Source of the DNA: Glycera tridactyla
Taxonomy: Eukaryota
Direction of reading: 5' to 3'
Length of the DNA: 64,000 nucleotides
Assembly: GCA_965644265.1 (NCBI GenBank)
Contig: OZ286468.1
Span: 62,620,001 to 62,684,000 of the forward strand
Under the pieces are notes generated by a model, which ran no database searches, was not told the origin of the DNA, and saw nothing but the letters and a program-made list of their open reading frames with translations. How positions within the stretch are numbered: position 1 is the stretch's first letter; every line of letters starts with the position of its first letter. Below are positions 18,201-58,060 of this stretch, one piece after another. A program made the position numbers and the translations under genes.

Positions 18201-21200
18201 CCGAGTACGATATCCACAATCTGTCGAATGCTGACGTTTCTATGGAGACAGCATCAGAGAGAGATGTGACCGGCTCCAGCAGCACAAAATCTGCCTCTCC
18301 GCTCCACGAGAGACCCACAAATACTGGTAGGTTCGTCATTCTGTCAAAAGAGCGTCATTTTCATCAACAGCCGGTCACATCATAATTGGAGCGTACCCCT
18401 TGTAGCTGGGGGGGGGGGGATCAATCTCACTCAGATTGACTTAACTAGATGTGGAATCATCTATAAGTTTTCTATGATTTCATGATGTTTATCATGGTTG
18501 GTTATTTTGAAGTGAGAGTGGGACAATGGGAGAAGCATCAAGGATTATTTCCCGATATTTTTGCCAACAGATGAAACTTCAACCTTGATCCCGTTCTAAG
18601 ATGCCGACACTCAAATTAATGGCTAATTGTTGTTTCTGGTGTTTATTTCAGATTTTATCGACATGAATGACGGCTTTCGTCAGCCAAAGATGAGACGTCT
18701 GGATGGTGCTGGTTGTTCTGCTCATGGTTATCCCGAGCAAGTACTAGATAGCCTGGATGAGGAGGTGGAAATAGTGCGTGCTACTGGTGACGACCACATG
18801 GTACAGTCTGCAGAACACCGCCACATGAGTATTTCCATCATGGCTTCCTCGGCAAACACCGTGCTTTCCTCGGGCCTCGTCCATTCGGGATCCACCACAA
18901 CATCAGCAAGAAGCAAAACACGACCTCTCTCCACCATCCCGAGCACCCCGAGCCTGCAGACTCCCGGTGGACCGCAGAATACGCCCTCCCACTCCTTCTC
19001 AACCATCCTGTCTTCGAGTTACTATGACAGCACTGGTCAGCTGTCGTGGCTGGAGGACGAGGACGAGGACGAGGACGTGTGTGATTTACGCAGCGTGGAG
19101 GAGGACTGCTGGGGCATCGTGGCTGACCTCGACAACAACAACGTCTCCAAGGACATGCTCTCCTCCACCATATCCACCACATTTGACAGCACTCTCGGGG
19201 TAAGAATCGCCACCGAATGCTCCTCCTCCCATCATCAACGTACTGATCAATTCAAAGAAGAAATGTGGCCACACAAACTGTCAAGGTCGAATCGCTAAAT
19301 AAGATGTTTTGCTCAATATACCCAGCACTTAGTTTATACAAGTGTCCAGCACAATTTGAGTGAAGGGATCTAGTGAATATAATATGAGACAGGACGTGGT
19401 GGTGAGTTCACAAATATCCAATTTTGAAATAGGTGCTACTGTTGTTGAGATGTCCCCAGGACAGCCGGTTATCCTCATATTTTCACTTTGGGATATTGGT
19501 ATTGATAACTGCAATCCAATTCATTTTTCATCTTTATTCATGACGATTTGTTCATGTGTTTTTAGGTTGATATGACGTCGACGAGTTGTAAGTGGCATCA
19601 TTTTGACTGCTTGCTTGATGCTGAGAACACTTTCGTGCAGCGCATGCAGGAGGCTACACAGCGCTTCTCACGACCTCTGCGCCATCATGTCCTTACGCAC
19701 AAGCAACACAAGACACTCTTCCAGAATATCGAAAAGGTATGCATGCAAGCTATGCGGCAAACTACTGTCCACTGTCTAAATGTTGGTGTGCTGATGGGGG
19801 GGGGGGGGCTTATATGGATATATTGTTGCCACTATCCTGCAGAATCCTCGTGCAGGTGCTTCCTCCCTTTACTTATCCCAAGTGTAGATTCCTAACCGTG
19901 TTCAAGTCGTCAGCAGAAATTGTTTCCAACAAACATTCCACTTATGATATATATGAGACAAATCACTTTTCAAGATTCAAATGAACTAGTTGGGTCTCAA
20001 TCTGTTCAAAGTCGTTTCAAGTTTAATTAAATATTGTAGTATTCAGATATTGTTATAATGGAATAGAATCATTTCTCTGCGCATCTCCCCTCGCTCTATT
20101 TCTCCCCCCCCCCCTTCATATGCTCACTCTCATTCTCATTGTCATGCTCTGTGCCTGTTTCATGGTCACTAAATCTTCCATTATGTCTCTTTCCAGCTGG
20201 TAGCAATAGCGCACTTTCACGTGAGACGACTTCGTAATGCGACTGCTCGCCACCAGATGGAGGTGAACGTTGACGTCACAATAAAGGATCATTCGGATGA
20301 GGATGACGTGGCAGTGGGTGACATCTATATGCCTCAACTGGGCCTCTTCTGTGAGGCCTACACCGCCTACTGTAATGGCCTCCCGAAGGCACTCGAGCTC
20401 CTCGACCAACTTACTGATGATGAGAAATTTCGCGCTTTCATCCAGAAATGCGAGCTCAGCGAGAAGGAACTAGACATTGTTGACTTTATTCGATTACCAG
20501 TCGTCCATATTGAGGACCTCCTCGAACAATTTGATTCGATGCTGCTTGACCTTCCATTGAGCTCGCAGGATTTCGAGGACGTGAGGACGGTGCGTGAATC
20601 GTTGCGAGCTTGTCTTCCTTCCACACCTGATAATTCACTACGCTACAGTTCCGACTCCGGCATCTCACGCACTTCCCTGGCAGCACGCACAGTCTCACAA
20701 ACATCTCTCAGCACGGTCTTCAGTGTCGATCAGCAAGTGGCTGATATCCAGAACCGACTCGTCTTCCCATCCTCGATGCAGGTATGTCGCCCATTCATCC
20801 ATCCCATGAAAGACACAGCAAACTATTGAACAACTTGATGTTCCACGTGGAAATACCATAGATACTCACTAATGAGCCCATCTACATTTATCAATTGTTC
20901 AGTCATAAGACAATCAGCCAGACTCTCAAACAATCAAGTCACCAACCACTCAGTCAGTCAGCGTTGCAATCAGTCAATCAATCAAGAGGACAATCAGTCA
21001 GCCAGTCAGCCAACCAGCCTCAGCTAGTCAGTCGATCGAGCAAAAAATCGATCTATCAGCATTTCTATCGATCGGTAGATCAACCAATTATTTACTTGAA
21101 GCAGACAGTGAATAAATGAGGCAAACAGTGTGATGTTTTGATCTGATTTTATGGCGATTTGTTTAAAATGACGGTAACACAGCACACTCGTTCGAATGTC

Positions 21201-40578: not shown

Positions 40579-42930
40579 GAGAAGGTTTGGGACAGGGGAA
40601 ACGAGAAGGTTTGGGAACAGGGGAGATGAGAATGCTGGGGACAGGGGAGATGAGAAGGTTGAGGACAGGGGGATTAGAATATTGGGGACAAGAGAGGTGA
40701 GAAGGTTGAGGACAGGAGAGATGCGAAGGTTGGGGACTAGAGAGATGAGAAGGTTGAGGACAGGGGAGAAGAGAAGATTGGGGACAGGGGAGATGATAAG
40801 GATGAGGACAGGGGAGATGAGAAGGTTGGGGACAGGGGAGATGAGAAGGTTGGGGACAGGGGAGATGAGAAGATTGGGGACAGGGGAGATGAGAAGGTTG
40901 GGGACAGGGGAGATAAGAAGGTTGAGGACAGGGGAGATGAGAAGGTTGAGGACAGGGGAGATGATAAGGTTGGGGACAGGGGAGATGATAAGGTTGAGGA
41001 CAGGGGAGATGAGAAGGTTGAGGACAGGGGAGATGAGAAGGTTGAGGACAGGGGAGATGAGATGAGAAGATTAGGGACAAAGGGGATGAGAAGGTTGAGG
41101 ACATGGGAGATGAGAAGGTTGAGGACAGGGGAGATGATAAGATTGGGGACAGGGGGATGAGAAGATTAGGGACAGGGGAGATGAGAAGATTAGGGACAGG
41201 GGAGATGAGAAGATTGGGGACAGGGGGATGAGAAGATTAGGGACAGGGGAGATGAGAAGATTAGGGACAGGGGAGATGAGAAGATTGGGGACAGGGGAGA
41301 TGAGAAGGTTGGGGACAGGGGAGATGATAAGATTGGGGACAGGGGAGATGAGAAGATTAGGGACAGGGGAGATGAGAAGATTAGGGACATGGGAGATGAG
41401 ATGAGAAGGTTGAGGACAGGGGAGATGAGAAGGTTGAGGACAGGAGAGATGAGAAGATTGGGGACAGGGGAGATGAGAAGGTTGGGGACAGGGGAAATGA
41501 TAAGGTTGGGGACAGGGGAGATGAGAAGGTTGGGGACAGGGGAGATGAGAAGGTTGGGCACAGGGGAGATGAGAAGGTTGGGCACAGGGGAGATGAGAAG
41601 ATTAGGGACAGGGGAGATGAGAAGATTTGGGACAGGGGAGATGAGAAGGTTGAGGACAGGGGAGATGAGAAGATTAGGGACAGGGGAGATGAGAAGATTG
41701 GGGACAGGGGAGATGAGAAGATTAGGGACAGGGGAGATGAGAAGATTAGGGACAGGGGAGATGAGAAGATTAGGGACAGGGGAGGTGAGAAGGTTGGGGA
41801 CAGGGGAGATGAGATGAGAAGGTTGGGGACAGGGGAGATGAGAAGGTTGAGGACAGGAGAGATGAGAAGGTTGGGGACAGGGGAGATGAGAAGATTAGGG
41901 ACAGGGGAGATGAGAAGATTGGGGACAAAGGAGATGAGAAGGTTGAGGACAGGGGAGATGAGAAGATTAGGGACAAAGGAGATGAGAAGGTTGAGGACAG
42001 GGGAGATGAGAAGATAAGGGACAGGGAAGATGATAAGGATGAGGACAGGGGAGATGAGAAGGTTGGGGACAGGGGAGATGAGAAGGTTGGGGACAGGGGA
42101 GATAAGAAGATTGGGGACAGGGGAGATGGGAAGATTGGGGACAGGGGAGATGATAAGGTTGGGGACAGGGGAGATGGGAAGGTTGAGGACAGGGGAGATG
42201 AGAAGGTTGAGGACAGGGGAGATGAGATGAGAAGATTGGGGACAGGGGAGATGAGAAGGTTGGGGACAGGGGAGATGAGAAGGTTGGGGACAGGGGAGAT
42301 GAGAAGATTGGGGACAGGGGAGATGAGATGAGAAGATTGGGGACAGGGGAGATGAGAAGGTTGAGGACAGGGGAGATGATAAGGTTGGGGACAGGGGAGA
42401 TGATAAGGTTGAGGACAGGGGAGATGAGAAGGTTGAGGACAGGGGAGATGAGAAAATTAGGGACATGGGAGATGAGAAGATTAGGGACAGGGGAGATGAG
42501 AAGATTAGGGACAGGGGAGATGAGATGAGAAGGTTGGGAACAAGAGAAATGAGAAGGTTGGGGACAGGGGAGATGATAAGATTGGGGAGAGGGGAGATGA
42601 GAAGGTTGAAGACAGGGGAGATGAGAAGATTAGGGACAGGGGAGATGAGAAGATTGGGGACAGGGGCGATGAGAAGGTTGGGGACAGGGGAGATGATAAG
42701 ATTGGGGACAGGGGAGATGAAAAGGTTGAGGACAGGGGAGATGAGAAGGTTGGGGACAGGGGAGATGAGAAGGTTGGGCACAGGGGAGATGAGAAGATTA
42801 GGGGCAGGGGAGATGAGATGAGAAGGTTGGGGACAAAGGAGATGAGAAGGTTGAGGACAGGGGAGATGAGAAGGTTGAGGACAGGGGAGATGAGAAGCTT
42901 CGGGAAGGGTAGATGAGGAGATTGGGGACC
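40579..42930. repeat. 24-bp purine-rich minisatellite, roughly 95 copies
   Basis: Unit GGGGACAGGGGAGATGAGAAGGTT and variants; it produces the spurious (MRRLGTGE)n, (PQPSHLPC)n and (LLISPVPN)n ORFs. Confidence 0.95.
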
Positions 42931-49545: not shown

Positions 49546-50819
49546 TAGGGAATTCTTAGATTTCAACCAGTCAGGCAGTGTGTCAGACATCCGCCCATCT
49601 GTCTATCTATATATCTGTCTGTCTGACTTTCCGTTTCTCACTTGCTCCTACTCTTGTACCCGTGTCTATCTGTCCGTTCATCAGAAGATATTGGCAGAAT
49701 GATTACACAGTTTCAGAAACGCTATAAACACTCATCATGCCGTTAAGAATGTATCTCCGCTAATGTGGATGCGTTTCTCCTGTCCCTGCCAATGATGAAA
49801 AATGTGATATCAGCGTGACTCGTTCTAGTTTGATGAGGTAACATGTCTGCCAGCTATAGGCTAGCCATCATTCTGGCTGGCCACTGCTGAATCAGCAACT
49901 CTCGGGTGGAGAATTAAGACCAAGGGCGTGTGTGAGCATTTGTAAATAGTATTGTCATCCGATGTATAAAAACCTACACGGGTCAGCTTCATTGTCATCC
50001 ACCCAAATGCCAAAATAAGTTGACAGCTGTGCTATCGTGATTCAGTCACTTCAAACATACGATGCATTTGTGCTTGTTAAAATTATGGTAATTTATTCAA
50101 CATTTCAGAGGAAAGACATTACATTCAACATACTTGTCTAAATTTGTATTGCGAATCCTCTTCGTTACCCGGCTTGTATGTTGCTTGAGATACCACATCG
50201 AATATGCAAAAACATTACGTTTCGTCCACATGCCACACGTAGATTACTTCTCTCCGTTTCCATCATTGGCATGATTATGAGGGACAGGTGAGGTGCACTT
50301 TACAAGTTTTATCTGAATAGTCTGGAAGTTTTTGTCACGACCATGATGACATGTAAGCCTAGTACAACTATCTCTAACCCTAATCGTGAGAAAAGGGGAC
50401 TTCCGAAAACATTGTCTTGTCATATTGATCTGGGAACTTCCAAAGCGCACACTATTTTGTTCATTTTATTTCATAAGTGTAGCTGAGAATATAGAAAAAG
50501 ATAGGTACCTGCCAATATAAAACTGATAAATTATCATGAAGAAGATGGTAGATATATAATTACATAACCAATTGTATGCGAAAGTGAACCAGGATTCGTT
50601 GAAAGCTATTTAAGAAACTGGATATTTCATCCTATTTTGTTCTTGTCCTGACGACCAGACAGGGTATTCAATACACCCGTGACAAAGGATCTGTCACCGG
50701 TCGTTGCTAAAATGAAAGACGTCCAAGGTGATGGTTGATGAGACTACTATCAGTATCGGGAGCTTGACGCGAACCAGTAATGGGAGGTTAGGCCTAGAGT
50801 TAACGTAGGCTAACCATCA

Positions 50820-50895
50820 TCAGTTGCCTGTTTTACGGGGGGCACCCCGAAGGATTCACAAAGGATAAGAGTGCGTTAATTGGCTTCGTGCTCCA
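50820..50895. repeat. DIRS 3' inverted terminal repeat (partner of 57562-57636)
   Basis: 50858-50895 is the exact reverse complement of 57562-57599 (38 bp). The outer part aligns only imperfectly. Confidence 0.85.
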
Positions 50896-50963
50896 ACTTT
50901 GACGACCATGCGACAATGACAAGTTTCTAAAAGGATTCACAAGGGTGGGCAACCCGAGGTGGG

Positions 50964-51092
50964 CTTTGTGAATCCTTCGGGGTGCCCCCCGTAAAACAGG
51001 CAACTGATGATGGTTAGCCTACGTTAACTCTAGGCCTAACCTCCCATCAGGTGCCTCCGTTTTCACGGAGTGCACCCCTTCGGACAAAGGAT
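50964..51092 (-). repeat. DIRS internal complementary region (ICR)
   Basis: 50964-51047 is the exact reverse complement of 50780-50863 (84 bp). 51047-51092 is the exact reverse complement of 57591-57636 (46 bp). The two halves share T51047. Confidence 0.93.
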
Positions 51093-51596
51093 TTTTGTAG
51101 ATTGTTATTTTCGTATGGACCTTAAGTGCGGTCACCTACATGTTATACCATCTCGATTTGGCGAAGGGCTTTTACCCGATCTCGTATCTCATCCCATGTG
51201 GTGTCATCTTTCGGTTCTCCCACCAAAAATACTAACTCTGCATGGACTTCCTGGCGGATTGTGACTGGATCACATGTGGGGCAATCACAAGGTGCCTGTC
51301 TGATAAGGATACAGTGATTTATGTGTAACACCACTGCCTTGATGATCTCACCATCAAATAATTTGTGCACCGTTACTTTCTCTGCCACAAAACTCTGGTC
51401 CCAAGGCGTTGGCAGGTTCATAGAGTACGACATCTGAAACAAATTGTATTCATGAGTTCCTGTGATAACACGTAATCCATCAAACTTTGAGTGGGGAAAT
51501 CGATGAAAAAACGACTGGAAATGTCACTTATATATGTAAGGTGTATATGTGATACTCAAACAATAGCCTGTGGTTCCCCTGTAACGTCTGGCACTC

Positions 51597-52586
51597 TCAC
51601 ACTTGCTGGGCCATGCTTGAACTGGATGTTGGTAATACTGATAATGCCAAATTTGCCACAGGGTTGATTGGCCGCAGGTAATAATGCCTGAATACAGATT
51701 CGGATTTCCAATCGATAGCTTGCATTATTTCTGTGATGGGTAGCTTCAAGGCAGCCTTGCTGGCCGCAGCTGATCTGGTGGAATGAGCAGTATATTTGAG
51801 GTCAATGCCTGCCTTTCTAAGAGTACGTTTTATCCAACCACTGATCGTAATTGTCGATGCTTGCTTTGTTGGTTCATTTGATGTGAGAAATAATTTGGAA
51901 ATGTTTCTACGTAGTGGTTTGGTCACCTTCATGTATTGTAAAAGGCATCGTACCACACAAATGTTGTCATTGCCTTGTATTACTGGTAAAACAATTGAAG
52001 GCGTCTTTCTTTTTCCACTGGTTTGTTTCATTCGTTCTTTTACATGGAAAATGACACATGTATTTGTTATTGTCAGGTGTTTCAGATCTAGGGCATGGAG
52101 TGTTTGCACTCTTTGACCTGTCGCTAAAGCTATGAGAGTGGCCAGCTTCTTATTCAGCTCAAAAAGCGAGAGTTGCTCATTTTTTGGTCCATTTTTCAAA
52201 AAATCTATGACTACATCTGGATCCCAGATGGTCTCATGTTTCGCTCTAGGGGGTTTGTCCAAGCCAATACCCCTAAAAAATCTTTTTAAAATTGGCATGG
52301 GAGTATCAGCTCCTGTAGTTAGTAGCCGAAAAGTAGTTAGTGCCGACTTGGCCACTCTCACTACTGCTATAGATTCACTTTCTCTGTATAATTCTGACAG
52401 GAAATTTATCATATTGTTTTCAGTTGGGTAATCGGGATCCAACTGCCATTTAAGGCAAAACCCCTCCCATTTGTCCAGATAGGACTTATACTGCTTGAGG
52501 GTACTTGCTCTCCATGATCCCAAGATAGCTCTTTTAGCTTCATCTGATATTTGTAACTTTTCCACCGCTCTCCTGAGACATGGCAC
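51597..52586 (-). CDS. DIRS ORF3, tyrosine recombinase
   Basis: 329-aa ORF overlapping the pol 3' end by 178 bp. Catalytic set present: R (ATGQR), K (MKQT), HxxR (HSTR), W (IDW), Y (RHYY). N-terminal core-binding region RASTLKQYKSYLDKW. Confidence 0.93.
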   Translation of the reverse strand: MPCLRRAVEKLQISDEAKRAILGSWRASTLKQYKSYLDKWEGFCLKWQLDPDYPTENNMINFLSELYRESESIAVVRVAKSALTTFRLLTTGADTPMPILKRFFRGIGLDKPPRAKHETIWDPDVVIDFLKNGPKNEQLSLFELNKKLATLIALATGQRVQTLHALDLKHLTITNTCVIFHVKERMKQTSGKRKTPSIVLPVIQGNDNICVVRCLLQYMKVTKPLRRNISKLFLTSNEPTKQASTITISGWIKRTLRKAGIDLKYTAHSTRSAAASKAALKLPITEIMQAIDWKSESVFRHYYLRPINPVANLALSVLPTSSSSMAQQV

Positions 52587-54499
52587 ATCAGGAGATTGAG
52601 GTGCCCCTGGAGAGGGTGTGTTCTTTTTGGATCGTGTGGCAATTGAATTGTTTCGTTTGTGACCAGTATTTCAATTGGATTTTGGACTAGGCATTTCAGA
52701 AGTTGTCCGAACCATGCGGCAGTTGGCCAATTTGGGGTTACCAGTATCGCCTCCACCTTGTCCAGTTGTATCCTTTGCAGGACTTTTGCCACCACACTGA
52801 AAGGCGGAAAACAATAAATCAGTTCATATTGTCTCCAATCTAGGAGGAAAGCATCAACGGCAACAGCAAAAGGATCATAATGATAGGACACGTAGGCATC
52901 AACCTTCTTATTCAGTCTAGAAGCAAACATGTCAATCGTTGGTCTAACTTTGAGTACTTTACATCCTGTTTGAAAAATGCTATTCTTTAAGCTCCATTCC
53001 GTTCTATCATTGAACAATCTACTCAAATTGTCAGCCACTTCATTTTCTACACCTGGAATATGGGTGGCTGTTAGCTGTACTCTAAGATTTAGAGCCCATA
53101 GCCACAATCGCCTGGCCTCCTCATTGCAGGTATTTGATCTACATCCCCCTTGGTTGTTAATGTATGTAACTGTGGTGGCATTGTCAGAGAAAATAAGTAT
53201 GTGTTTTCCAGCAACTAATCTCTGCAATGCTTTCAGTCCTAAGAAGACTGCCCGCAATTCTAAAACATTTATGTGCAGTTTTTGTTCATTTTCATGCCAT
53301 CTACCCTGTGCATTGTCCTTCGTGTTCTCACAGTGAATGCCCCATCCTATAAGTGATGCATCCGTTTTCATATTCAACTGGACTGGTATTGGTAACAGTC
53401 TTCTAGGCTCATTTTTAGCTACTGATAACCACCACCTGATGTCTGGTAAAATTTCTTGTGGGGTGGAGAACTTTCCCTCGAGATTGCCCTTCATTTCCTT
53501 GACAGCCTGGTTTCTGTGTCGCTCTAGTCTGTGTTTGAATAGATTCCCATTTTCCACCCCTGGTATGCAAGCCTGCATGGTGCCTAATAGCTCCATGGTT
53601 TGTCTGATGGTGGCTTGGTTGTGTACTAACGGGCGTGCTCTCTCACACAGTTTTTCTGATTTATCCTTGGTTATAGCTGCCGTCATATCCTGTGTATTTA
53701 GTGTAAAACCTAGGTGTTCAATGCACTGGGTAGGGTATACTACTGATTTTTTGTCATTCACCACAAATCCCAGAGATCTCAAGAGTTCTATGGTATAGGT
53801 TCCTTCTTCCCGGCATTTTTGTTCTGTGTCACACTGTAACCAAATGTCATCCAGATAGATGGAAGTGGTAATCCCTCTCGCTCGTAAATGCGCCATAATG
53901 GGCTTTGTGATCTTCGTGAATATTCGGGGGGACGGTGATAGTCCCATGGGTAGAGCTCTGTATTGGTAATGCTTCCCACCCCATTTGAAACGTAAATATT
54001 TCCTATCAGATGGGTGAATAAGGATGCTGTAATATGCATCCTGTAAATCAATCGACATCATCCAGTGATTGGGCTGCATCAGCTGCATGCAAGTTGTCAG
54101 TGTGTCCATTTTGAATTTTTGTTTCTCCATGAACTTTTTAAGTGGTTTCAAATTTATGATAAGTCTATACTGGCCCAGTGTTTTCTTGGGTGTGAGGAAT
54201 ACGGTTGAATAATAGTCACCCTCCTCTGGTAAGCATACCTCTATTACATTGTTTTTCAAAAGTTTCTGTATTTCATGTTCCAGAGGGCGCCTAAGGTGTT
54301 GTTGCACTATGGTGGGTGGTCTCTGGAGTTGCTGTGGTTTTTTGCTGAACTCTATCCTCAGTCCCGTGGCTAGTATGCGCAGGATGTATTGGTTTGATGT
54401 GATTGTCCGCCAAGTTTTCATGCAATGCTGGGTACCTCCTGTCATAGTATTTGAGCTGGTACTTACATTTGTAGGAGGTGTTGCTCTGTCGAGTGCCAT
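52409..54499 (-). CDS. DIRS ORF2, reverse transcriptase - RNase H - N6-adenine methyltransferase-like domain
   Basis: 696-aa ORF. RT motifs RLIINLK, SIDLQDAY, LPMGLSPSPRIFTK, YLDD. RNase H motifs TDAS..GWG, HINVLEL, SDN, HIPGVENEVADNLSR. MT-like region IDMFASRLN...DAF...YCFPPF...PNWPTAAWF. Confidence 0.95.
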   Translation of the reverse strand: MALDRATPPTNVSTSSNTMTGGTQHCMKTWRTITSNQYILRILATGLRIEFSKKPQQLQRPPTIVQQHLRRPLEHEIQKLLKNNVIEVCLPEEGDYYSTVFLTPKKTLGQYRLIINLKPLKKFMEKQKFKMDTLTTCMQLMQPNHWMMSIDLQDAYYSILIHPSDRKYLRFKWGGKHYQYRALPMGLSPSPRIFTKITKPIMAHLRARGITTSIYLDDIWLQCDTEQKCREEGTYTIELLRSLGFVVNDKKSVVYPTQCIEHLGFTLNTQDMTAAITKDKSEKLCERARPLVHNQATIRQTMELLGTMQACIPGVENGNLFKHRLERHRNQAVKEMKGNLEGKFSTPQEILPDIRWWLSVAKNEPRRLLPIPVQLNMKTDASLIGWGIHCENTKDNAQGRWHENEQKLHINVLELRAVFLGLKALQRLVAGKHILIFSDNATTVTYINNQGGCRSNTCNEEARRLWLWALNLRVQLTATHIPGVENEVADNLSRLFNDRTEWSLKNSIFQTGCKVLKVRPTIDMFASRLNKKVDAYVSYHYDPFAVAVDAFLLDWRQYELIYCFPPFSVVAKVLQRIQLDKVEAILVTPNWPTAAWFGQLLKCLVQNPIEILVTNETIQLPHDPKRTHPLQGHLNLLMCHVSGERWKSYKYQMKLKELSWDHGEQVPSSSISPIWTNGRGFALNGSWIPITQLKTI

Positions 54500-54501
54500 C
54501 G

Positions 54502-56487
54502 CTACATTGGTCTGCCACGTGAGCCTCTTCTGTATTTATGCAGACTATTACCATAGTCAGAATAGCCTGACTGGGAAGAAGTGCCAGGGTTGGGGTTGTC
54601 TGAAGTGCTTCGTTTCTGTCCCCTGCCCCTGCCTGTGCCAGATTCTAGGTTTTTGCTCTCCTCCTCTCTACCCTCACTCTGGTGCCAACAGCCACGTGCT
54701 CTGCCTCGATTACCGCGTCCGCGATTTCCTCTATCGAACCTCGAGATGCGTTCCGATATAGCCTGGGATTCTGCTACTTCTTTTAATTCTTTGGCAATGT
54801 CCCCGAACAACAATTTACCAAAGGGGATCTTTTTTGCACAAAGTGCCCTATAAGGCCCCAGCTGCGGTCGCAGTGCAAAACGTCTTAATAAAGTGAGTTC
54901 AATTTGAGCCGCTGCCAGTGATTGTAGCGTAGTTAGTAATTTGGTCGCCAAATCGCCGTTTGATGGTGCCTTGTTCACGAGCAAGTCATTGAGCAAATAT
55001 ACTAAAGGGGTTGCACCTTTTGAGACCAAAATTTGAACCTGTCTCCTTTTGAAATCCGCATTTCTTGGGAAATCCTCCATGCGGGCCATTATTTCAGTAT
55101 TGGTTGTAGGAGGTCGGAGTTCTGTGACATTTTCTGGTACTAGTATATTTTTTACCAGGTTCTCAATCGCCTCCTTAGTGAGTTTTGAAGTTAACATTTC
55201 TTTGATTTTAACCGCCAATTGTTCTGAAATTCCAGGGCCTGTTCTGCCCTCTTCTAGATAATCATCATCCGTGGAATGAAGTAGTCGCAAAATGTTATTA
55301 TTCAAATCATCATTTGCCGGGAGTGGCCCCCCTGTACCACCTGGCAGCTGTGCCTCCTGCTCATGTAACAGCGTGTTATGGGACGGAACACTCTGCGTTA
55401 CAGCTGGAGCTGTGTGTCTATCTGATGGGGGAAACATATCAACTAATTGGCTTGCTACTGTTGTCAGCCCACCTTGCTCCACCACTGTTTGTGTTACGTT
55501 TTTGTCTGTATCTGCCTTTTTCGTCTTTGTTGATTTATTCTTTTGTTTAGCGTCCTTTCGTTCCTGGAATCTGACCTTTGGCAAATCCGCTTGCCTCTTA
55601 TCTGTCACCGGTAGCATACGCGGGTCTTGTGGTGGATCTAATTCATTCGCTGCGAGTGGAATGTTTGGCACGTGCCCGGTGGCTCCCTGAGGCCGAGTTT
55701 GATTAGATGCTATCTTAGCCACATCATTTGATGTAACTTCATTCTCAGGGTCTGAAATATCTTCATAGTGCCCTGCATAGTAATCAGCTGGGTCCATGTC
55801 TGAGTCCTCCTCATCAGAGGAAGATATTTCATGTTCTTTCTGTGTATTATTTTCTGTCTGTACTGGCTCCACCGGCCCCGAAACGCCCGCAACAGGCAAG
55901 TTATTTTTATTTGCTTCTGAAGCAGCCACTGTCTGCACAATTTGTGTCAATAAGGCTTGCATTTGCTGTTTGAATGGTTCAAGCTCTCGTCTGATCAGTT
56001 CTGAGTGGCTTTGGTCTAAAGTAGGGCTAGTGGTCATAACTTCCAGTGGACCCTGGTCTTTCTCTAGGGGAGTTGTTTGTTCTTGTGATTGCGTTAGTAG
56101 TAGGTTTTCAACAGCCGAGATTGTTTCTTGGCTATCATATTCACGTTCAGTGTCATGCAATTCATTTGAGTTTGTGTCTATCAAGGAGGCTTCTGCTTCT
56201 GAAAAGGCCTGAAGAATGGTAGAAGTGGCATTACTTGTCTCAGACTCTGGCACAGGCAAGGTAGGGTTAATTGCTACACGTTTGCTTTTACGTGGTTTTT
56301 TGGAGGCATTTACCTGCTTTTTTGCTTTTCTGTCAGTATATTCACAATATGTGTCCTCTGGCACTCCTTCTCCATTTGACTTATCCTCCATGGTGTAGTC
56401 ACTTAACTCACTTTTCACTTTAGTGAATATGGGGCAGGTTGGCACATGTGTCGTGTTTGGCTTCCAAGTAGGAAAAGGCAGATTCAC
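54502..56487 (-). CDS. DIRS ORF1, gag-like protein
   Basis: 661-codon ORF; the first ATG gives MEDKSNG about 32 codons in. GPGISEQLA...PENVTELRPPTTNTEIM...DFKRRQVQ resembles invertebrate DIRS gag; basic RG-rich C-terminus; located upstream of pol. Confidence 0.8.
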   Translation of the reverse strand: MNLPFPTWKPNTTHVPTCPIFTKVKSELSDYTMEDKSNGEGVPEDTYCEYTDRKAKKQVNASKKPRKSKRVAINPTLPVPESETSNATSTILQAFSEAEASLIDTNSNELHDTEREYDSQETISAVENLLLTQSQEQTTPLEKDQGPLEVMTTSPTLDQSHSELIRRELEPFKQQMQALLTQIVQTVAASEANKNNLPVAGVSGPVEPVQTENNTQKEHEISSSDEEDSDMDPADYYAGHYEDISDPENEVTSNDVAKIASNQTRPQGATGHVPNIPLAANELDPPQDPRMLPVTDKRQADLPKVRFQERKDAKQKNKSTKTKKADTDKNVTQTVVEQGGLTTVASQLVDMFPPSDRHTAPAVTQSVPSHNTLLHEQEAQLPGGTGGPLPANDDLNNNILRLLHSTDDDYLEEGRTGPGISEQLAVKIKEMLTSKLTKEAIENLVKNILVPENVTELRPPTTNTEIMARMEDFPRNADFKRRQVQILVSKGATPLVYLLNDLLVNKAPSNGDLATKLLTTLQSLAAAQIELTLLRRFALRPQLGPYRALCAKKIPFGKLLFGDIAKELKEVAESQAISERISRFDRGNRGRGNRGRARGCWHQSEGREEESKNLESGTGRGRGQKRSTSDNPNPGTSSQSGYSDYGNSLHKYRRGSRGRPM

Positions 56488-57253
56488 TCTCTAATCTCGC
56501 GGGATTTGGTTAATCTCACGTGATATTCTCTCTCTTCCGGTAGCTCTCTGAGTGGCCAGCCATAGTGTTCACTTTACATATTCTATTGCACTACCGACCT
56601 TCACGGCTGCCCCGCCGTCTGACCCAGTGGCCTCTTTTCAGTATTATGTAATTTTTTCGATGCCCCAGTTCTTTTTTACCCTCGTTTGCTTGGTCTCTTG
56701 ACCTGCATTCCTTGTGGGTCATGGTCTGGACATTATTCTGTCTGCCATTTTGGTCAGTTCTCACTTTGCTTTTTCCTTATTCTAGATTTATAATTCCTTC
56801 ATTTTTGGCTTGCTTAAATCAGATTCCATTTCTCTAGGCCTGTATGCCTTCTCAATAGTCAATTTCTGCATTGACATAAGTTTTTGTTTGTAATCAAACT
56901 TTTCTGTTTGTAACATGTATTCTGTGCCTATTGTTCCTTTTTAAGGACCACTTCTCTACTCAAACCACTTGCTCTGCATCTATCACAGAACCTTCATTAA
57001 TTGTTGGTCTCTCTATGGAGACTTTTTCTTTTAATCCTCGTTTCCCGTGATCAATCTGTTCCTCTCGAGGTCTGATTGTATATTTCTGTAATATCCTCCT
57101 TCTCATCATAGAGCCCATCAAAAACTAGACCCGAGGTGATGGTCATACCATCTCTGATCATATAGTCACAAGTATGTGTCTATGGCCCTTTCTCTCTAGT
57201 TTCAACTCTTTCAGGTGATTTTCACACTGCCGTGTGGGGATTTCACTGAAAAC

Positions 57254-57484
57254 CCCATGTCTCTCATACCTTTCAGTGTATGATAGCCTTATTGTTGGAG
57301 ACTGAACTCTAGTTCAGTTTCCTTTCTCTTTTTCTGGCCTCATTGAGCCTAGGGTTACTGTCAGTTATATCCCATGTCTCTCATACCCTTTCAGTGTATG
57401 ATAGCCTTATTGTTGGAGACTGAACTCTAGTTCAGTTTTCTTTCTCTCTTCCTGGCCTCATTGAGCCTAGGGTTACTGTCAGTT
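57254..57484. repeat. 117-bp tandem duplication in the DIRS 5' leader
   Basis: cccatgtctctcatacc...gggttactgtcagtt starts at 57254 and again at 57371, near-identical. Confidence 0.9.
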
Positions 57485-57561
57485 GCCAGTCACATCCCCC
57501 CCCCCCCTATTGGTGGGAGCGGGAGGTTCCGATGTTGACCGCACGAAACCATTGCACTGAC

Positions 57562-57636
57562 TGGAGCACGAAGCCAATTAACGCACTCTTATCCTTTGTC
57601 CGAAGGGGTGCACTCCGTGAAAACGGAGGCACCTGA
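57562..57636. repeat. DIRS 5' inverted terminal repeat
   Basis: Partner of 50820-50895. Contains the hairpin CTCCGT-GAAA-ACGGAG at 57613-57628. Confidence 0.85.
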
Positions 57637-57699: not shown

Positions 57700-58060
57700 T
57701 TGTGCTACGGTTGTGGTGGTGGTAGCGGCTGTGGTGGAGGAGTTGGTGGTGGTTGAGCAGCTGAGGTAGCAGGAGTGCCCCAGTGCCACCGCTATCGCCG
57801 CCACCACCGCCATCACCGCCTTCTCTGTCACCGCTGTCACCACCACCACCACCACCACCACCACCACCACCACCACCAGCAGCGTCACCAACAGCACCAG
57901 CGCCGCCTCCTCTGCCACCGCCACCGCCACCGCCACCGCCACCGCCACCGCCACCGCCACAAAACCCACCAGCGCCAGCACACCGCCACTTCAATAATCA
58001 CCACCCCCAACAGCGGCGGCAGCAGCAACAGCAACAGCAACAACAACAACCACACCATGA
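57700..58060. repeat. Composite (GGT)n / (CCA)n / (CCGCCA)n / (CAG,CAA)n tract next to the DIRS 5' end
   Basis: Direct reading. Confidence 0.9.

What the first reader, a model, noticed from the sequence alone, without database searches (positions are those of the whole stretch)
50780..57636. Complete, apparently transposition-competent DIRS1 element
Seen: all three ORFs are open (661, 696 and 329 codons) with intact RT YLDD, RNase H and YR R-K-HxxR-W-Y residues. The 84-, 46- and 38-bp terminal matches have no mismatch. There is no TSD, and the inferred empty site reads ...GAACCAGTA(A)GCTAGCTG.... Established: DIRS1 elements replicate through a circular DNA intermediate integrated by the tyrosine recombinase. 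Inference: this is a very recent insertion from a possibly active and possibly undescribed family, in a window where the LINE copies are decayed.
Basis: partly seen in the sequence, partly recalled or inferred. Interest (0 to 1): 0.7.

Follow-up and report, generated by a model that had tools for sequence, protein, structure and literature searches.

The report
Young but defective DIRS1-like retrotransposon copy
This is a real, young tyrosine-recombinase (DIRS1-like) retrotransposon. It is not the complete, jump-ready copy it first seemed: it has lost 635 bp, including the end of a conserved fourth gene, and carries a private stop codon at the start of its recombinase gene.

Summary
Window 50780-57636 (minus strand) is a DIRS1-like element. 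It has a gag-like ORF, an RT/RNase H/methyltransferase-like ORF and a tyrosine-recombinase ORF. The 84-, 46- and 38-nt terminus/ICR matches are perfect, and there is no target-site duplication.

The reading "complete, apparently transposition-competent" does not hold. The 2.04-Gb genome has four copies at 99.3-99.6 % identity, in different flanks. Against its three sisters, the window copy:
- lacks 635 bp at window 51148/51149, which removes the last 34 codons of a fourth ORF;
- carries a private CGA>TGA at 52671-52673, 14 codons after the recombinase start codon that sister copies and related families share.

It has 18 private substitutions (0.27 %), so it is young but not brand-new. Each sister copy is also broken somewhere.

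The family itself was active recently. Contigs from four public runs (probably transcriptomes) carry the long, stop-free form. Two of those runs hold a 5' junction at a site on another chromosome where the reference has none.

The most novel point is the fourth gene (130 aa). It occurs in at least six DIRS families of this genome and is under purifying selection. It has no detectable homologue or known fold. Its ATG always follows a canonical splice acceptor. This scan had already noted a hidden fourth gene on other DNA of this genome (s1-314057).

The parts
57562..57636 (-). Left (5') terminus. The outer 37 nt (57600-57636) are complementary only to the left ICR; the inner 38 nt (57562-57599) are the conserved ITR.
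   Evidence: Inverted repeats I2 and I3, 100 %. Sister copies start at the same base.
56392..57561 (-). 5' leader of about 1.15 kb. It holds a 118-bp tandem duplication (57254-57484, two units) and 28 ATG triplets.
   Evidence: Direct repeats D2 and D3. The C51 sister copy has one unit only. ATG count.
54502..56391 (-). ORF1, gag-like: 629 aa from the first ATG, with no Pfam domain. A candidate splice donor CAG|GTAAAT lies after codon 26 (window 56314|56313).
52409..54499 (-). ORF2, 696 aa: reverse transcriptase (YLDD), RNase H and a C-terminal Dam-like methyltransferase region. Its ATG lies 2 nt after the ORF1 stop.
   Evidence: Pfam RVT_1 2.3e-23, RT_RNaseH and RVT_3. Dam 0.0029, below the curated cut-off. 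Junction sequence.
51597..52715 (-). ORF3, tyrosine recombinase. The shared ATG is at 52715-52713. A private TGA at 52673-52671 (CGA in all relatives) leaves only 52586..51597 open.
   Evidence: All four sequencing runs read G (that is, CGA) at 52673.
51434..51450 (-). Polypyrimidine tract plus CAG directly before the ORF4 ATG: a candidate 3' splice site, kept in six DIRS families.
51143..51433 (-). ORF4, truncated here to 96 aa (130 aa in relatives). It is a conserved fourth gene of unknown function.
51148..51149 (.). Junction of a 635-bp deletion private to this copy, with 2-nt GG microhomology. The lost segment holds ORF4 codons 97-130, 3' UTR and a nested MITE of about 160 bp.
   Evidence: Contigs of X1-X4 run on into the long form at this point.
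50964..51092 (-). Internal complementary region. The right half (50964-51047) and the left half (51047-51092) overlap by one base, which marks the circle junction.
   Evidence: Inverted repeats I1 and I2.
50780..50895 (-). Right (3') terminus. The outer 78 nt (right extension plus divergent ITR) are complementary to the right ICR; the inner 38 nt are the conserved ITR.
   Evidence: Inverted repeats I1 and I3. End confirmed against sister copies.

Best explanation
The stretch is one insertion of a young, low-copy DIRS1-like retrotransposon family. The full-length form is about 7.4-7.5 kb and carries four genes: gag-like, RT/RNase H/methyltransferase-like, tyrosine recombinase, and a conserved 130-aa ORF4.

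How such elements are thought to work (from the literature, not shown here): the element is transcribed and reverse-transcribed. The internal complementary region then serves to restore and join the two termini. The tyrosine recombinase inserts the product at a short A/T-rich site without a target-site duplication.

This copy keeps all of its cis parts (both termini and the ICR, with perfect matches). It is most likely not autonomous, for two reasons:
- a 635-bp deletion removed the conserved C-terminal quarter of ORF4 and the 3' UTR;
- a CpG transition made a stop codon 14 codons after the start codon that sister copies and related families share for the recombinase.

At best it could be moved in trans by proteins from other elements. 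It was inserted roughly at the time of a small burst that also gave three sister copies. Since then it has gained about 0.27 % private substitutions.
For: - Architecture: ITR/ICR; RT, RNase H, YR, weak Dam.
- Independent insertions without target-site duplication.
- Four copies in a star-like pattern: private substitutions are 18 (window), 11, 16 and 30 over 6732 columns, with one shared site.
- The deletion is derived. All three sisters have the 635 bp. An approximately 85 % relative on C34 matches part of it. The lost ORF4 residues are conserved in families that share only 30-50 % identity.
- The nonsense codon is private. It is synonymous in ORF2. The frame is open, with an ATG at or near the same place, in the three sisters, L041 and L043. 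No slippery heptamer is shared by the related families in the ORF2/ORF3 overlap.
- Private substitutions across the four copies are 37 nonsynonymous to 20 synonymous, close to the neutral expectation.
- Contigs of four runs carry the long form and CGA, and none of the 16 window-private letters within the stretch laid (all 18 lie in the element).
Against: - How DIRS elements translate overlapping ORFs is unknown. If the recombinase is made by frameshifting from ORF2 downstream of the stop, the TGA would not matter. The window family has one GGGTTTT heptamer in the overlap.
- ORF4's function is unknown, so its C-terminus may not be needed for transposition.
- It cannot be told whether the deletion arose before or after insertion.
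- The window copy's own private coding changes are 7 nonsynonymous to 8 synonymous. That ratio hints weakly that some arose in a still-selected lineage.
Confidence: 0.78

Rival explanations
1. One reading: a complete, autonomous and currently transposition-competent DIRS1 element from a very recent insertion.
For: The three classical ORFs are open over all catalytic domains. The terminus/ICR matches are perfect. Sister copies are 99.3-99.6 % identical. The family is probably transcribed, and it has a junction absent from the reference.
Against: This copy has a private 635-bp deletion that truncates a gene under purifying selection. It has a private stop just after the shared recombinase ATG. 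It carries 18 private substitutions. No contig shows its diagnostic letters or its deletion junction. The perfect repeats carry little weight at this divergence, where P(0 mismatches) is about 0.4.
Confidence: 0.1
2. The short form is a non-autonomous deletion derivative that was already deleted when it inserted. On this reading it was copied in trans by proteins of full-length relatives, so the deletion pre-dates the insertion.
For: The cis parts (termini and ICR) are intact and perfect. The 2-nt microhomology at the junction fits template switching during reverse transcription as well as it fits genomic deletion. [quoted passage not shown] Another note of this scan reports a mini-DIRS in this genome (s1-349751, not tested here).
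Against: Only one place in the genome carries this junction. No contig in four runs bridges it.
Confidence: 0.25
3. The four copies arose by segmental duplication, not by transposition.
For: Segmental duplications exist in this genome. Three identical termini of a related family lie 78.6 kb apart on C11.
Against: The flanks of the four copies are unrelated right up to the element ends. The window flanks are unique in the genome.
Confidence: 0.01

Closest known systems
Mollusc-type DIRS1-like elements (AcaDIRS1/2 of Aplysia californica; LgDIRS1/3 of Lottia gigantea; Piednoel et al. 2011, PMC3266345, Table 3)
   Same: The terminus layout is nearly the same. The divergent and conserved ITR parts are of similar small size (published 30-36 / 31-36 nt; here 37 / 38). 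The right extension is about 41-48 nt, there is no left extension, and the ICR halves are about 45 and 85 nt (here 46 and 84). The gene order is gag, then RT/RH/MT, then YR, and there is no target-site duplication.
   Different: The full-length family here is 7.4-7.5 kb, against a published range of 3974-6283 bp. The ICR halves overlap by 1 nt (T/A), not by a 3-nt NTT/AAN junction. There is a long ORF2/ORF3 overlap, which was reported as absent in Mollusca, and a fourth conserved ORF. ORF2 identity to anything in the protein collection is at most 44 %. The host is not known to me, so the mollusc resemblance is only structural.
DIRS-1 of Dictyostelium discoideum (the prototype)
   Same: It has a tyrosine recombinase, RT/RNase H, ITRs and an ICR complementary to both ends. 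The ICR-dependent replication model applies to both.
   Different: The ORF order differs (the YR overlaps pol in DIRS-1). DIRS-1 has much longer ITRs (about 300 nt) and three ORFs only. Its mechanism was tested experimentally; nothing was tested here.
Spliced 3' accessory or env genes of retroviruses and some Ty3/gypsy elements (an analogy for ORF4 only)
   Same: A small extra gene lies downstream of the enzymatic genes. A conserved splice acceptor sits directly before its start codon.
   Different: ORF4 has no signal peptide or membrane segment, and no sequence or fold similarity to any known protein. Splicing has not been shown.

Membership tests
DIRS1-like superfamily (order DIRS) | Tyrosine recombinase with R-K-HxxR-(H/W)-Y in place of a DDE integrase | tested here: met
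   Pfam Phage_integrase 4.5e-12. R159, K183/187, H268, R271, W293 and Y303 are invariant in the alignment.
DIRS1-like superfamily (order DIRS) | Reverse transcriptase plus RNase H in one pol ORF | tested here: met
   RVT_1 2.3e-23. RT_RNaseH 9.7e-5 and RVT_3 4.5e-4 are both just under their curated cut-offs. YLDD is present.
DIRS1-like superfamily (order DIRS) | Methyltransferase (Dam-like) domain after RNase H | tested here: inconclusive
   The C-terminal 230 aa hit PF05869 Dam at E 0.0029, 17.7 bits, below the 28.1 cut-off. Many 40 % homologues carry PF05869.
DIRS1-like superfamily (order DIRS) | Inverted terminal repeats plus an internal complementary region whose two halves complement the two termini and meet at the circle junction | tested here: met
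   Three 100 % inverted repeats with exactly this geometry. Related families L041 and L043 have the same layout. The overlap is 1 nt, not the usual 3.
DIRS1-like superfamily (order DIRS) | Insertion without target-site duplication | tested here: met
   Four copies show no duplication. In 11 of 18 related 3' junctions the flank starts with TA after CCCA(T/A).
DIRS1-like superfamily (order DIRS) | Three ORFs (gag, pol, YR) | tested here: not met
   Full-length members have a fourth conserved ORF. This is an addition to the canonical set, not a loss from it.
PAT-like / Ngaro elements | Split direct repeats at the ends, no ICR; no MT domain in Ngaro | tested here: not met
   The only direct repeats are an internal 118-bp tandem duplication and a flanking microsatellite. 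The termini are inverted and an ICR is present.
Autonomous (coding-complete) copy of its own family | All genes of the full-length family open from their shared start codons | tested here: not met
   ORF4 is truncated by the 635-bp deletion. A TGA lies 14 codons after the shared YR ATG.

The most novel reading that the evidence does not exclude
The DIRS1-like elements of this genome form a four-gene variant. A conserved 130-aa protein with no known homologue or fold is encoded downstream of the recombinase. It would be expressed from a spliced subgenomic mRNA, through a conserved acceptor directly before its ATG. A conserved phase-0 donor about 20-26 codons into gag may fuse a short gag N-terminus to it. 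That would be the first accessory, env-position gene described for tyrosine-recombinase retrotransposons.
Probability: 0.45. Interest if true: 0.65.

Novelty: new variant of a known kind. Interest (0 to 1): 0.45.

Why it matters
As a single insertion this is ordinary: one slightly decayed copy of a young DIRS1-like family.

It matters in two ways. First, it shows that open ORFs and perfect terminal repeats do not by themselves show competence. Comparison with sister copies found two private lesions that reading one copy alone could not reveal.

Second, the comparison exposed a fourth gene in the DIRS elements of this genome. It is constrained as strongly as the reverse transcriptase and has a conserved splice acceptor. 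DIRS elements are described as three-ORF elements whose expression and replication are poorly understood. A conserved accessory gene and a subgenomic RNA would be new handles on their biology.

The family also has evidence of recent activity (a junction absent from the reference, and probable transcripts). This genome may therefore be a useful natural system for studying metazoan DIRS mobility.

Tried and rejected
- ORF4 identity. Pfam gave nothing significant. A word search of 5.8 billion proteins gave nothing. A profile search of 1.84 billion representatives gave two weak hits (E 2.5e-5 and 2.6e-4); the one inspected, P0136, is an artefactual tandem-repeat protein. ESM Atlas gave nothing usable.
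- ORF4 fold. The AlphaFold2 model is confident (pLDDT 83). Foldseek against PDB and BFVD, and VIA-align wide, gave no match above background: best Z 5.8, best E 0.009. Weak hits include several PD-(D/E)XK-type nucleases (AddAB, UL24, tRNA-splicing endonuclease). ORF4 shows no D...(D/E)xK motif, so I do not adopt that reading.
- -1 frameshift as the route to the recombinase. No slippery heptamer is shared by the related families.
- Empty site or alternative haplotype in the assembly. The flanks are unique, apart from a 75-nt repeat and a microsatellite.
- Fetching 20 more ORF4-bearing elements. The donor site could therefore be compared in three families only.
- Selection on private changes. 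The overall ratio is close to neutral.
- Consensus sequences. None was built or saved. Copies were compared column by column at variable sites only.

Full report
**1. The observation**

On the minus strand of window 50780-57636 there are three large ORFs of 661, 696 and 329 codons. Pfam finds RVT_1 (2.3e-23) and RNase H-like domains in the second, and a phage-integrase catalytic domain (4.5e-12) in the third. It finds nothing in the first, as is usual for DIRS gag-like ORFs. The last 230 residues of ORF2 weakly match Dam methyltransferase (E 0.0029, below the cut-off).

Three inverted repeats are 100 % complementary: 50780-50863 with 50964-51047 (84 nt), 51047-51092 with 57591-57636 (46 nt), and 50858-50895 with 57562-57599 (38 nt). 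Read in the element's orientation they give:
- a 75-nt left terminus;
- a 116-nt right terminus with a right extension;
- a 38-nt conserved ITR core;
- a 129-nt ICR whose two halves complement the two termini and overlap by one base.

This is the DIRS1-like layout described by Piednoel et al. 2011 (PMC3266345). The sizes are closest to their mollusc elements. One caveat: the 661 and 329 figures count from GTG. From ATG, ORF1 is 629 aa and ORF3 only 271 aa.

**2. Copies in the genome**

The window lies on contig C28 of a 2.04-Gb assembly. A whole-genome search finds three near-identical sister copies:
- C1:22548173-22555681;
- C51:77071798-77079169;
- C31:78008300 onward, which is split by about 17 kb of foreign DNA.

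It also finds an approximately 85 % fragmentary relative on C34, several families at about 65-68 % identity, and dozens of termini of other DIRS families at about 80 %.

The four copies have unrelated flanks right up to the element ends and no target-site duplication. They are therefore independent insertions, not segmental duplicates.

The counts are window 18, C1 11, C51 16 and C31 30 over 6732 columns, and pairwise divergence is 0.42-0.72 %. This is a star-like burst. The window copy's 0.27 % private divergence means it is young but not brand-new. On assumed rates of 1-5e-9 per site per year (my assumption, since the host rate is unknown), its age is of the order of 0.5-3 million years. At this divergence about 0.9 mismatches are expected in the 168 repeat pairs. 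The perfect repeats (P about 0.4) therefore add nothing to the dating.

**3. Why this copy is not complete**

(a) *The deletion.* All three sisters have 635 bp at window 51148|51149 that this copy lacks, and the junction shows a 2-nt GG microhomology.
- The segment is not simply an inserted repeat. Only its middle 160 bp or so is a very abundant MITE, with more than 2,300 first-look candidates. The remaining 475 bp or so occur only in the three sisters. The approximately 85 % C34 relative matches part of the segment.
- The deletion cuts a fourth ORF from 130 aa in the sisters to 96 aa here.

(b) *The stop codon.* In the recombinase frame the sisters are open for 408 codons, with an ATG giving 372 aa. 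The window copy has TGA instead of CGA at 52673-52671, 14 codons after that ATG.
- The change is a CpG transition. It is synonymous in the overlapping ORF2 frame and private to this copy.
- Two families with about 65 % nucleotide identity to this one (L041 on C1, L043 on C13) also have their recombinase ATG at or near the same place, and they share the N-terminal extension.
- No slippery heptamer is conserved in the overlap, so independent initiation at that ATG is the more likely route.
- The next ATG in the window copy would remove about 100 residues, including conserved N-terminal residues such as W25, Y33 and W40, which are invariant across families.

(c) *Other private changes.* They include E>K at an acidic position conserved across families in the recombinase, and F>L at an invariant position in ORF4.

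Each sister copy is also damaged: C1 has a stop in ORF1, C51 has a frameshift in ORF1 and a stop in ORF2, and C31 has a frameshift in ORF2 plus the large insertion. Across copies, private coding changes are 37 nonsynonymous to 20 synonymous, close to neutral.

**4. Evidence from public runs**

Four runs from two organism labels and two studies hold the element. All are stored as contigs, and the tool only guesses that two are RNA.

Laid on window 50300-56299, their contigs cover the element at about 99.6 % identity, with one 5.8-kb contig in X1. None covers the unique flank at 50300-50779. That is what transcriptomes would give, not genome shotgun data, but the runs are not proven to be RNA.

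All four runs run on into the long form at 51148/51149 and read G (CGA, no stop) at 52673. They carry the sister-copy letter at all 16 window-private sites inside the stretch laid. There is thus no sign of this copy, or its deletion junction, in those data. Contigs do drop rare variants, so this is not proof of absence.

The single 'joint' reported (51083 back to 50858) is just the left terminus, which lies outside the stretch laid.

X1 and X2 also hold a short contig that joins a 28-nt foreign sequence to the element's 5' end. That 28-mer occurs once in the reference, at C4:24900306-24900333. The flank-element junction does not occur in the reference. These samples therefore carry an insertion of this family that the reference lacks. 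The same contigs differ from all four reference copies at four sites, which fits a fifth source copy.

**5. The fourth gene**

- *Distribution.* ORF4 is present and intact (130 aa) in the sisters, L041 and L043. Six-frame search finds at least 85 matches in the genome, most full-length and free of stops, and the positions checked (about ten matches against termini) lie about 2 kb upstream of DIRS termini.
- *Selection.* Between L041 and L043, pN is 0.17 and pS is 0.98. That is as constrained as ORF2, at 0.17 and 0.80.
- *Homology and fold.* It has no Pfam family, no word-search hit, and only two weak hits among 1.84 billion representatives, the one inspected being a tandem-repeat artefact. An AlphaFold2 model is confident (pLDDT 83; three long strands, a 27-residue helix, two more strands), yet it matches no solved or viral fold above background.
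- *Splice acceptor.* In all six families for which I hold sequence, the ORF4 ATG is directly preceded by a pyrimidine-rich tract ending in CAG or TAG. The surrounding non-coding sequence is otherwise unalignable.
- *Candidate donor.* AAG/CAG|GTAA sits at the same codon boundary 20-26 codons into ORF1 in three families. It is in phase 0, which would fuse the gag N-terminus to ORF4 in frame. This donor is weak evidence on its own, because a conserved K-K-V motif encodes it.

Splicing is therefore inferred, not shown. The full-text search found no paper that links DIRS elements with an ORF4. The 2011 overview describes three ORFs and a maximum length of 6283 bp.

**6. Target site**

After the terminal CCCA(T/A), the flank begins with TA in 11 of 18 independent junctions of this and related families. 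This fits the A/T-rich AWAAT|G site that another agent derived from 180 junctions in this genome (s1-347598). Two of the four copies lack the final T. The one-base 'junction' is therefore not always present on both sides.

**7. Verdict**

This is a genuine DIRS1-like element from a young family that was active recently. This particular copy is a defective member with intact cis sequences. [quoted passage not shown] The claim of a circular DNA intermediate is a model, not an established fact. That paper found mostly linear single-stranded cDNA.

- Only one read-laying run was available.
- Repbase and Dfam are not on hand.
- The host organism is coded and unknown to me.

Noticed in passing
L002:8339-8503 (C1 sister copy); absent from the window copy: A MITE-like repeat of about 150-160 bp is nested in the 3' UTR of all three sister copies and in the expressed contigs. 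It has more than 2,300 first-look candidates in the genome at about 90-93 % identity. An element already carrying this MITE therefore went on transposing.
   Followed up: partly
G000 C4:24900306-24900333 (not fetched): Runs X1 and X2 hold a contig that joins this unique 28-mer to the family's 5' end. The reference has the 28-mer but not the junction. This is a non-reference, possibly polymorphic, insertion that may be the main transcribed copy in X1.
   Followed up: partly
L041:1541-8728 and L043:822-8220: Two related DIRS families (about 65 % nucleotide identity to this one) each have a copy with all four ORFs open and perfect or near-perfect terminus/ICR repeats. In both, the ORF1 stop and the ORF2 start overlap (ATGATG).
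   Followed up: partly
window 57254-57484: There is a 118-bp tandem duplication in the 5' leader. The window, C1 and C31 copies have two units; the C51 copy has one.
   Followed up: yes
G000 C11:12565922, 12644524, 12723126: Three identical DIRS termini with identical flanks lie exactly 78.6 kb apart. This is a tandem segmental duplication that contains a DIRS element of another family.
   Followed up: no
window 40579-42929: A 24-bp minisatellite of about 97 copies at 87 % match, with strong G-over-C skew. It explains the long spurious minus-strand ORFs there.
   Followed up: partly
window 20221-20829 (+): An open frame with a RhoGEF domain (Pfam 1.1e-9), probably an exon of a host gene about 30 kb from the element.
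   Followed up: no
window 57780-57960: A (CCA/CAC/CGC)n triplet-repeat tract lies directly beside the element's 5' end and gives coding-looking ORFs on both strands. It has no Pfam match.
   Followed up: partly
window 51503-51511: The A6 run here is about A15 in the contigs of X1 and X2. Their assemblies break at this homopolymer, which is a length difference between copies.
   Followed up: no
L004/L005 (C31:78013571-78030679): The C31 sister copy is interrupted inside the recombinase gene by about 17 kb of foreign DNA, which I did not examine.
   Followed up: no
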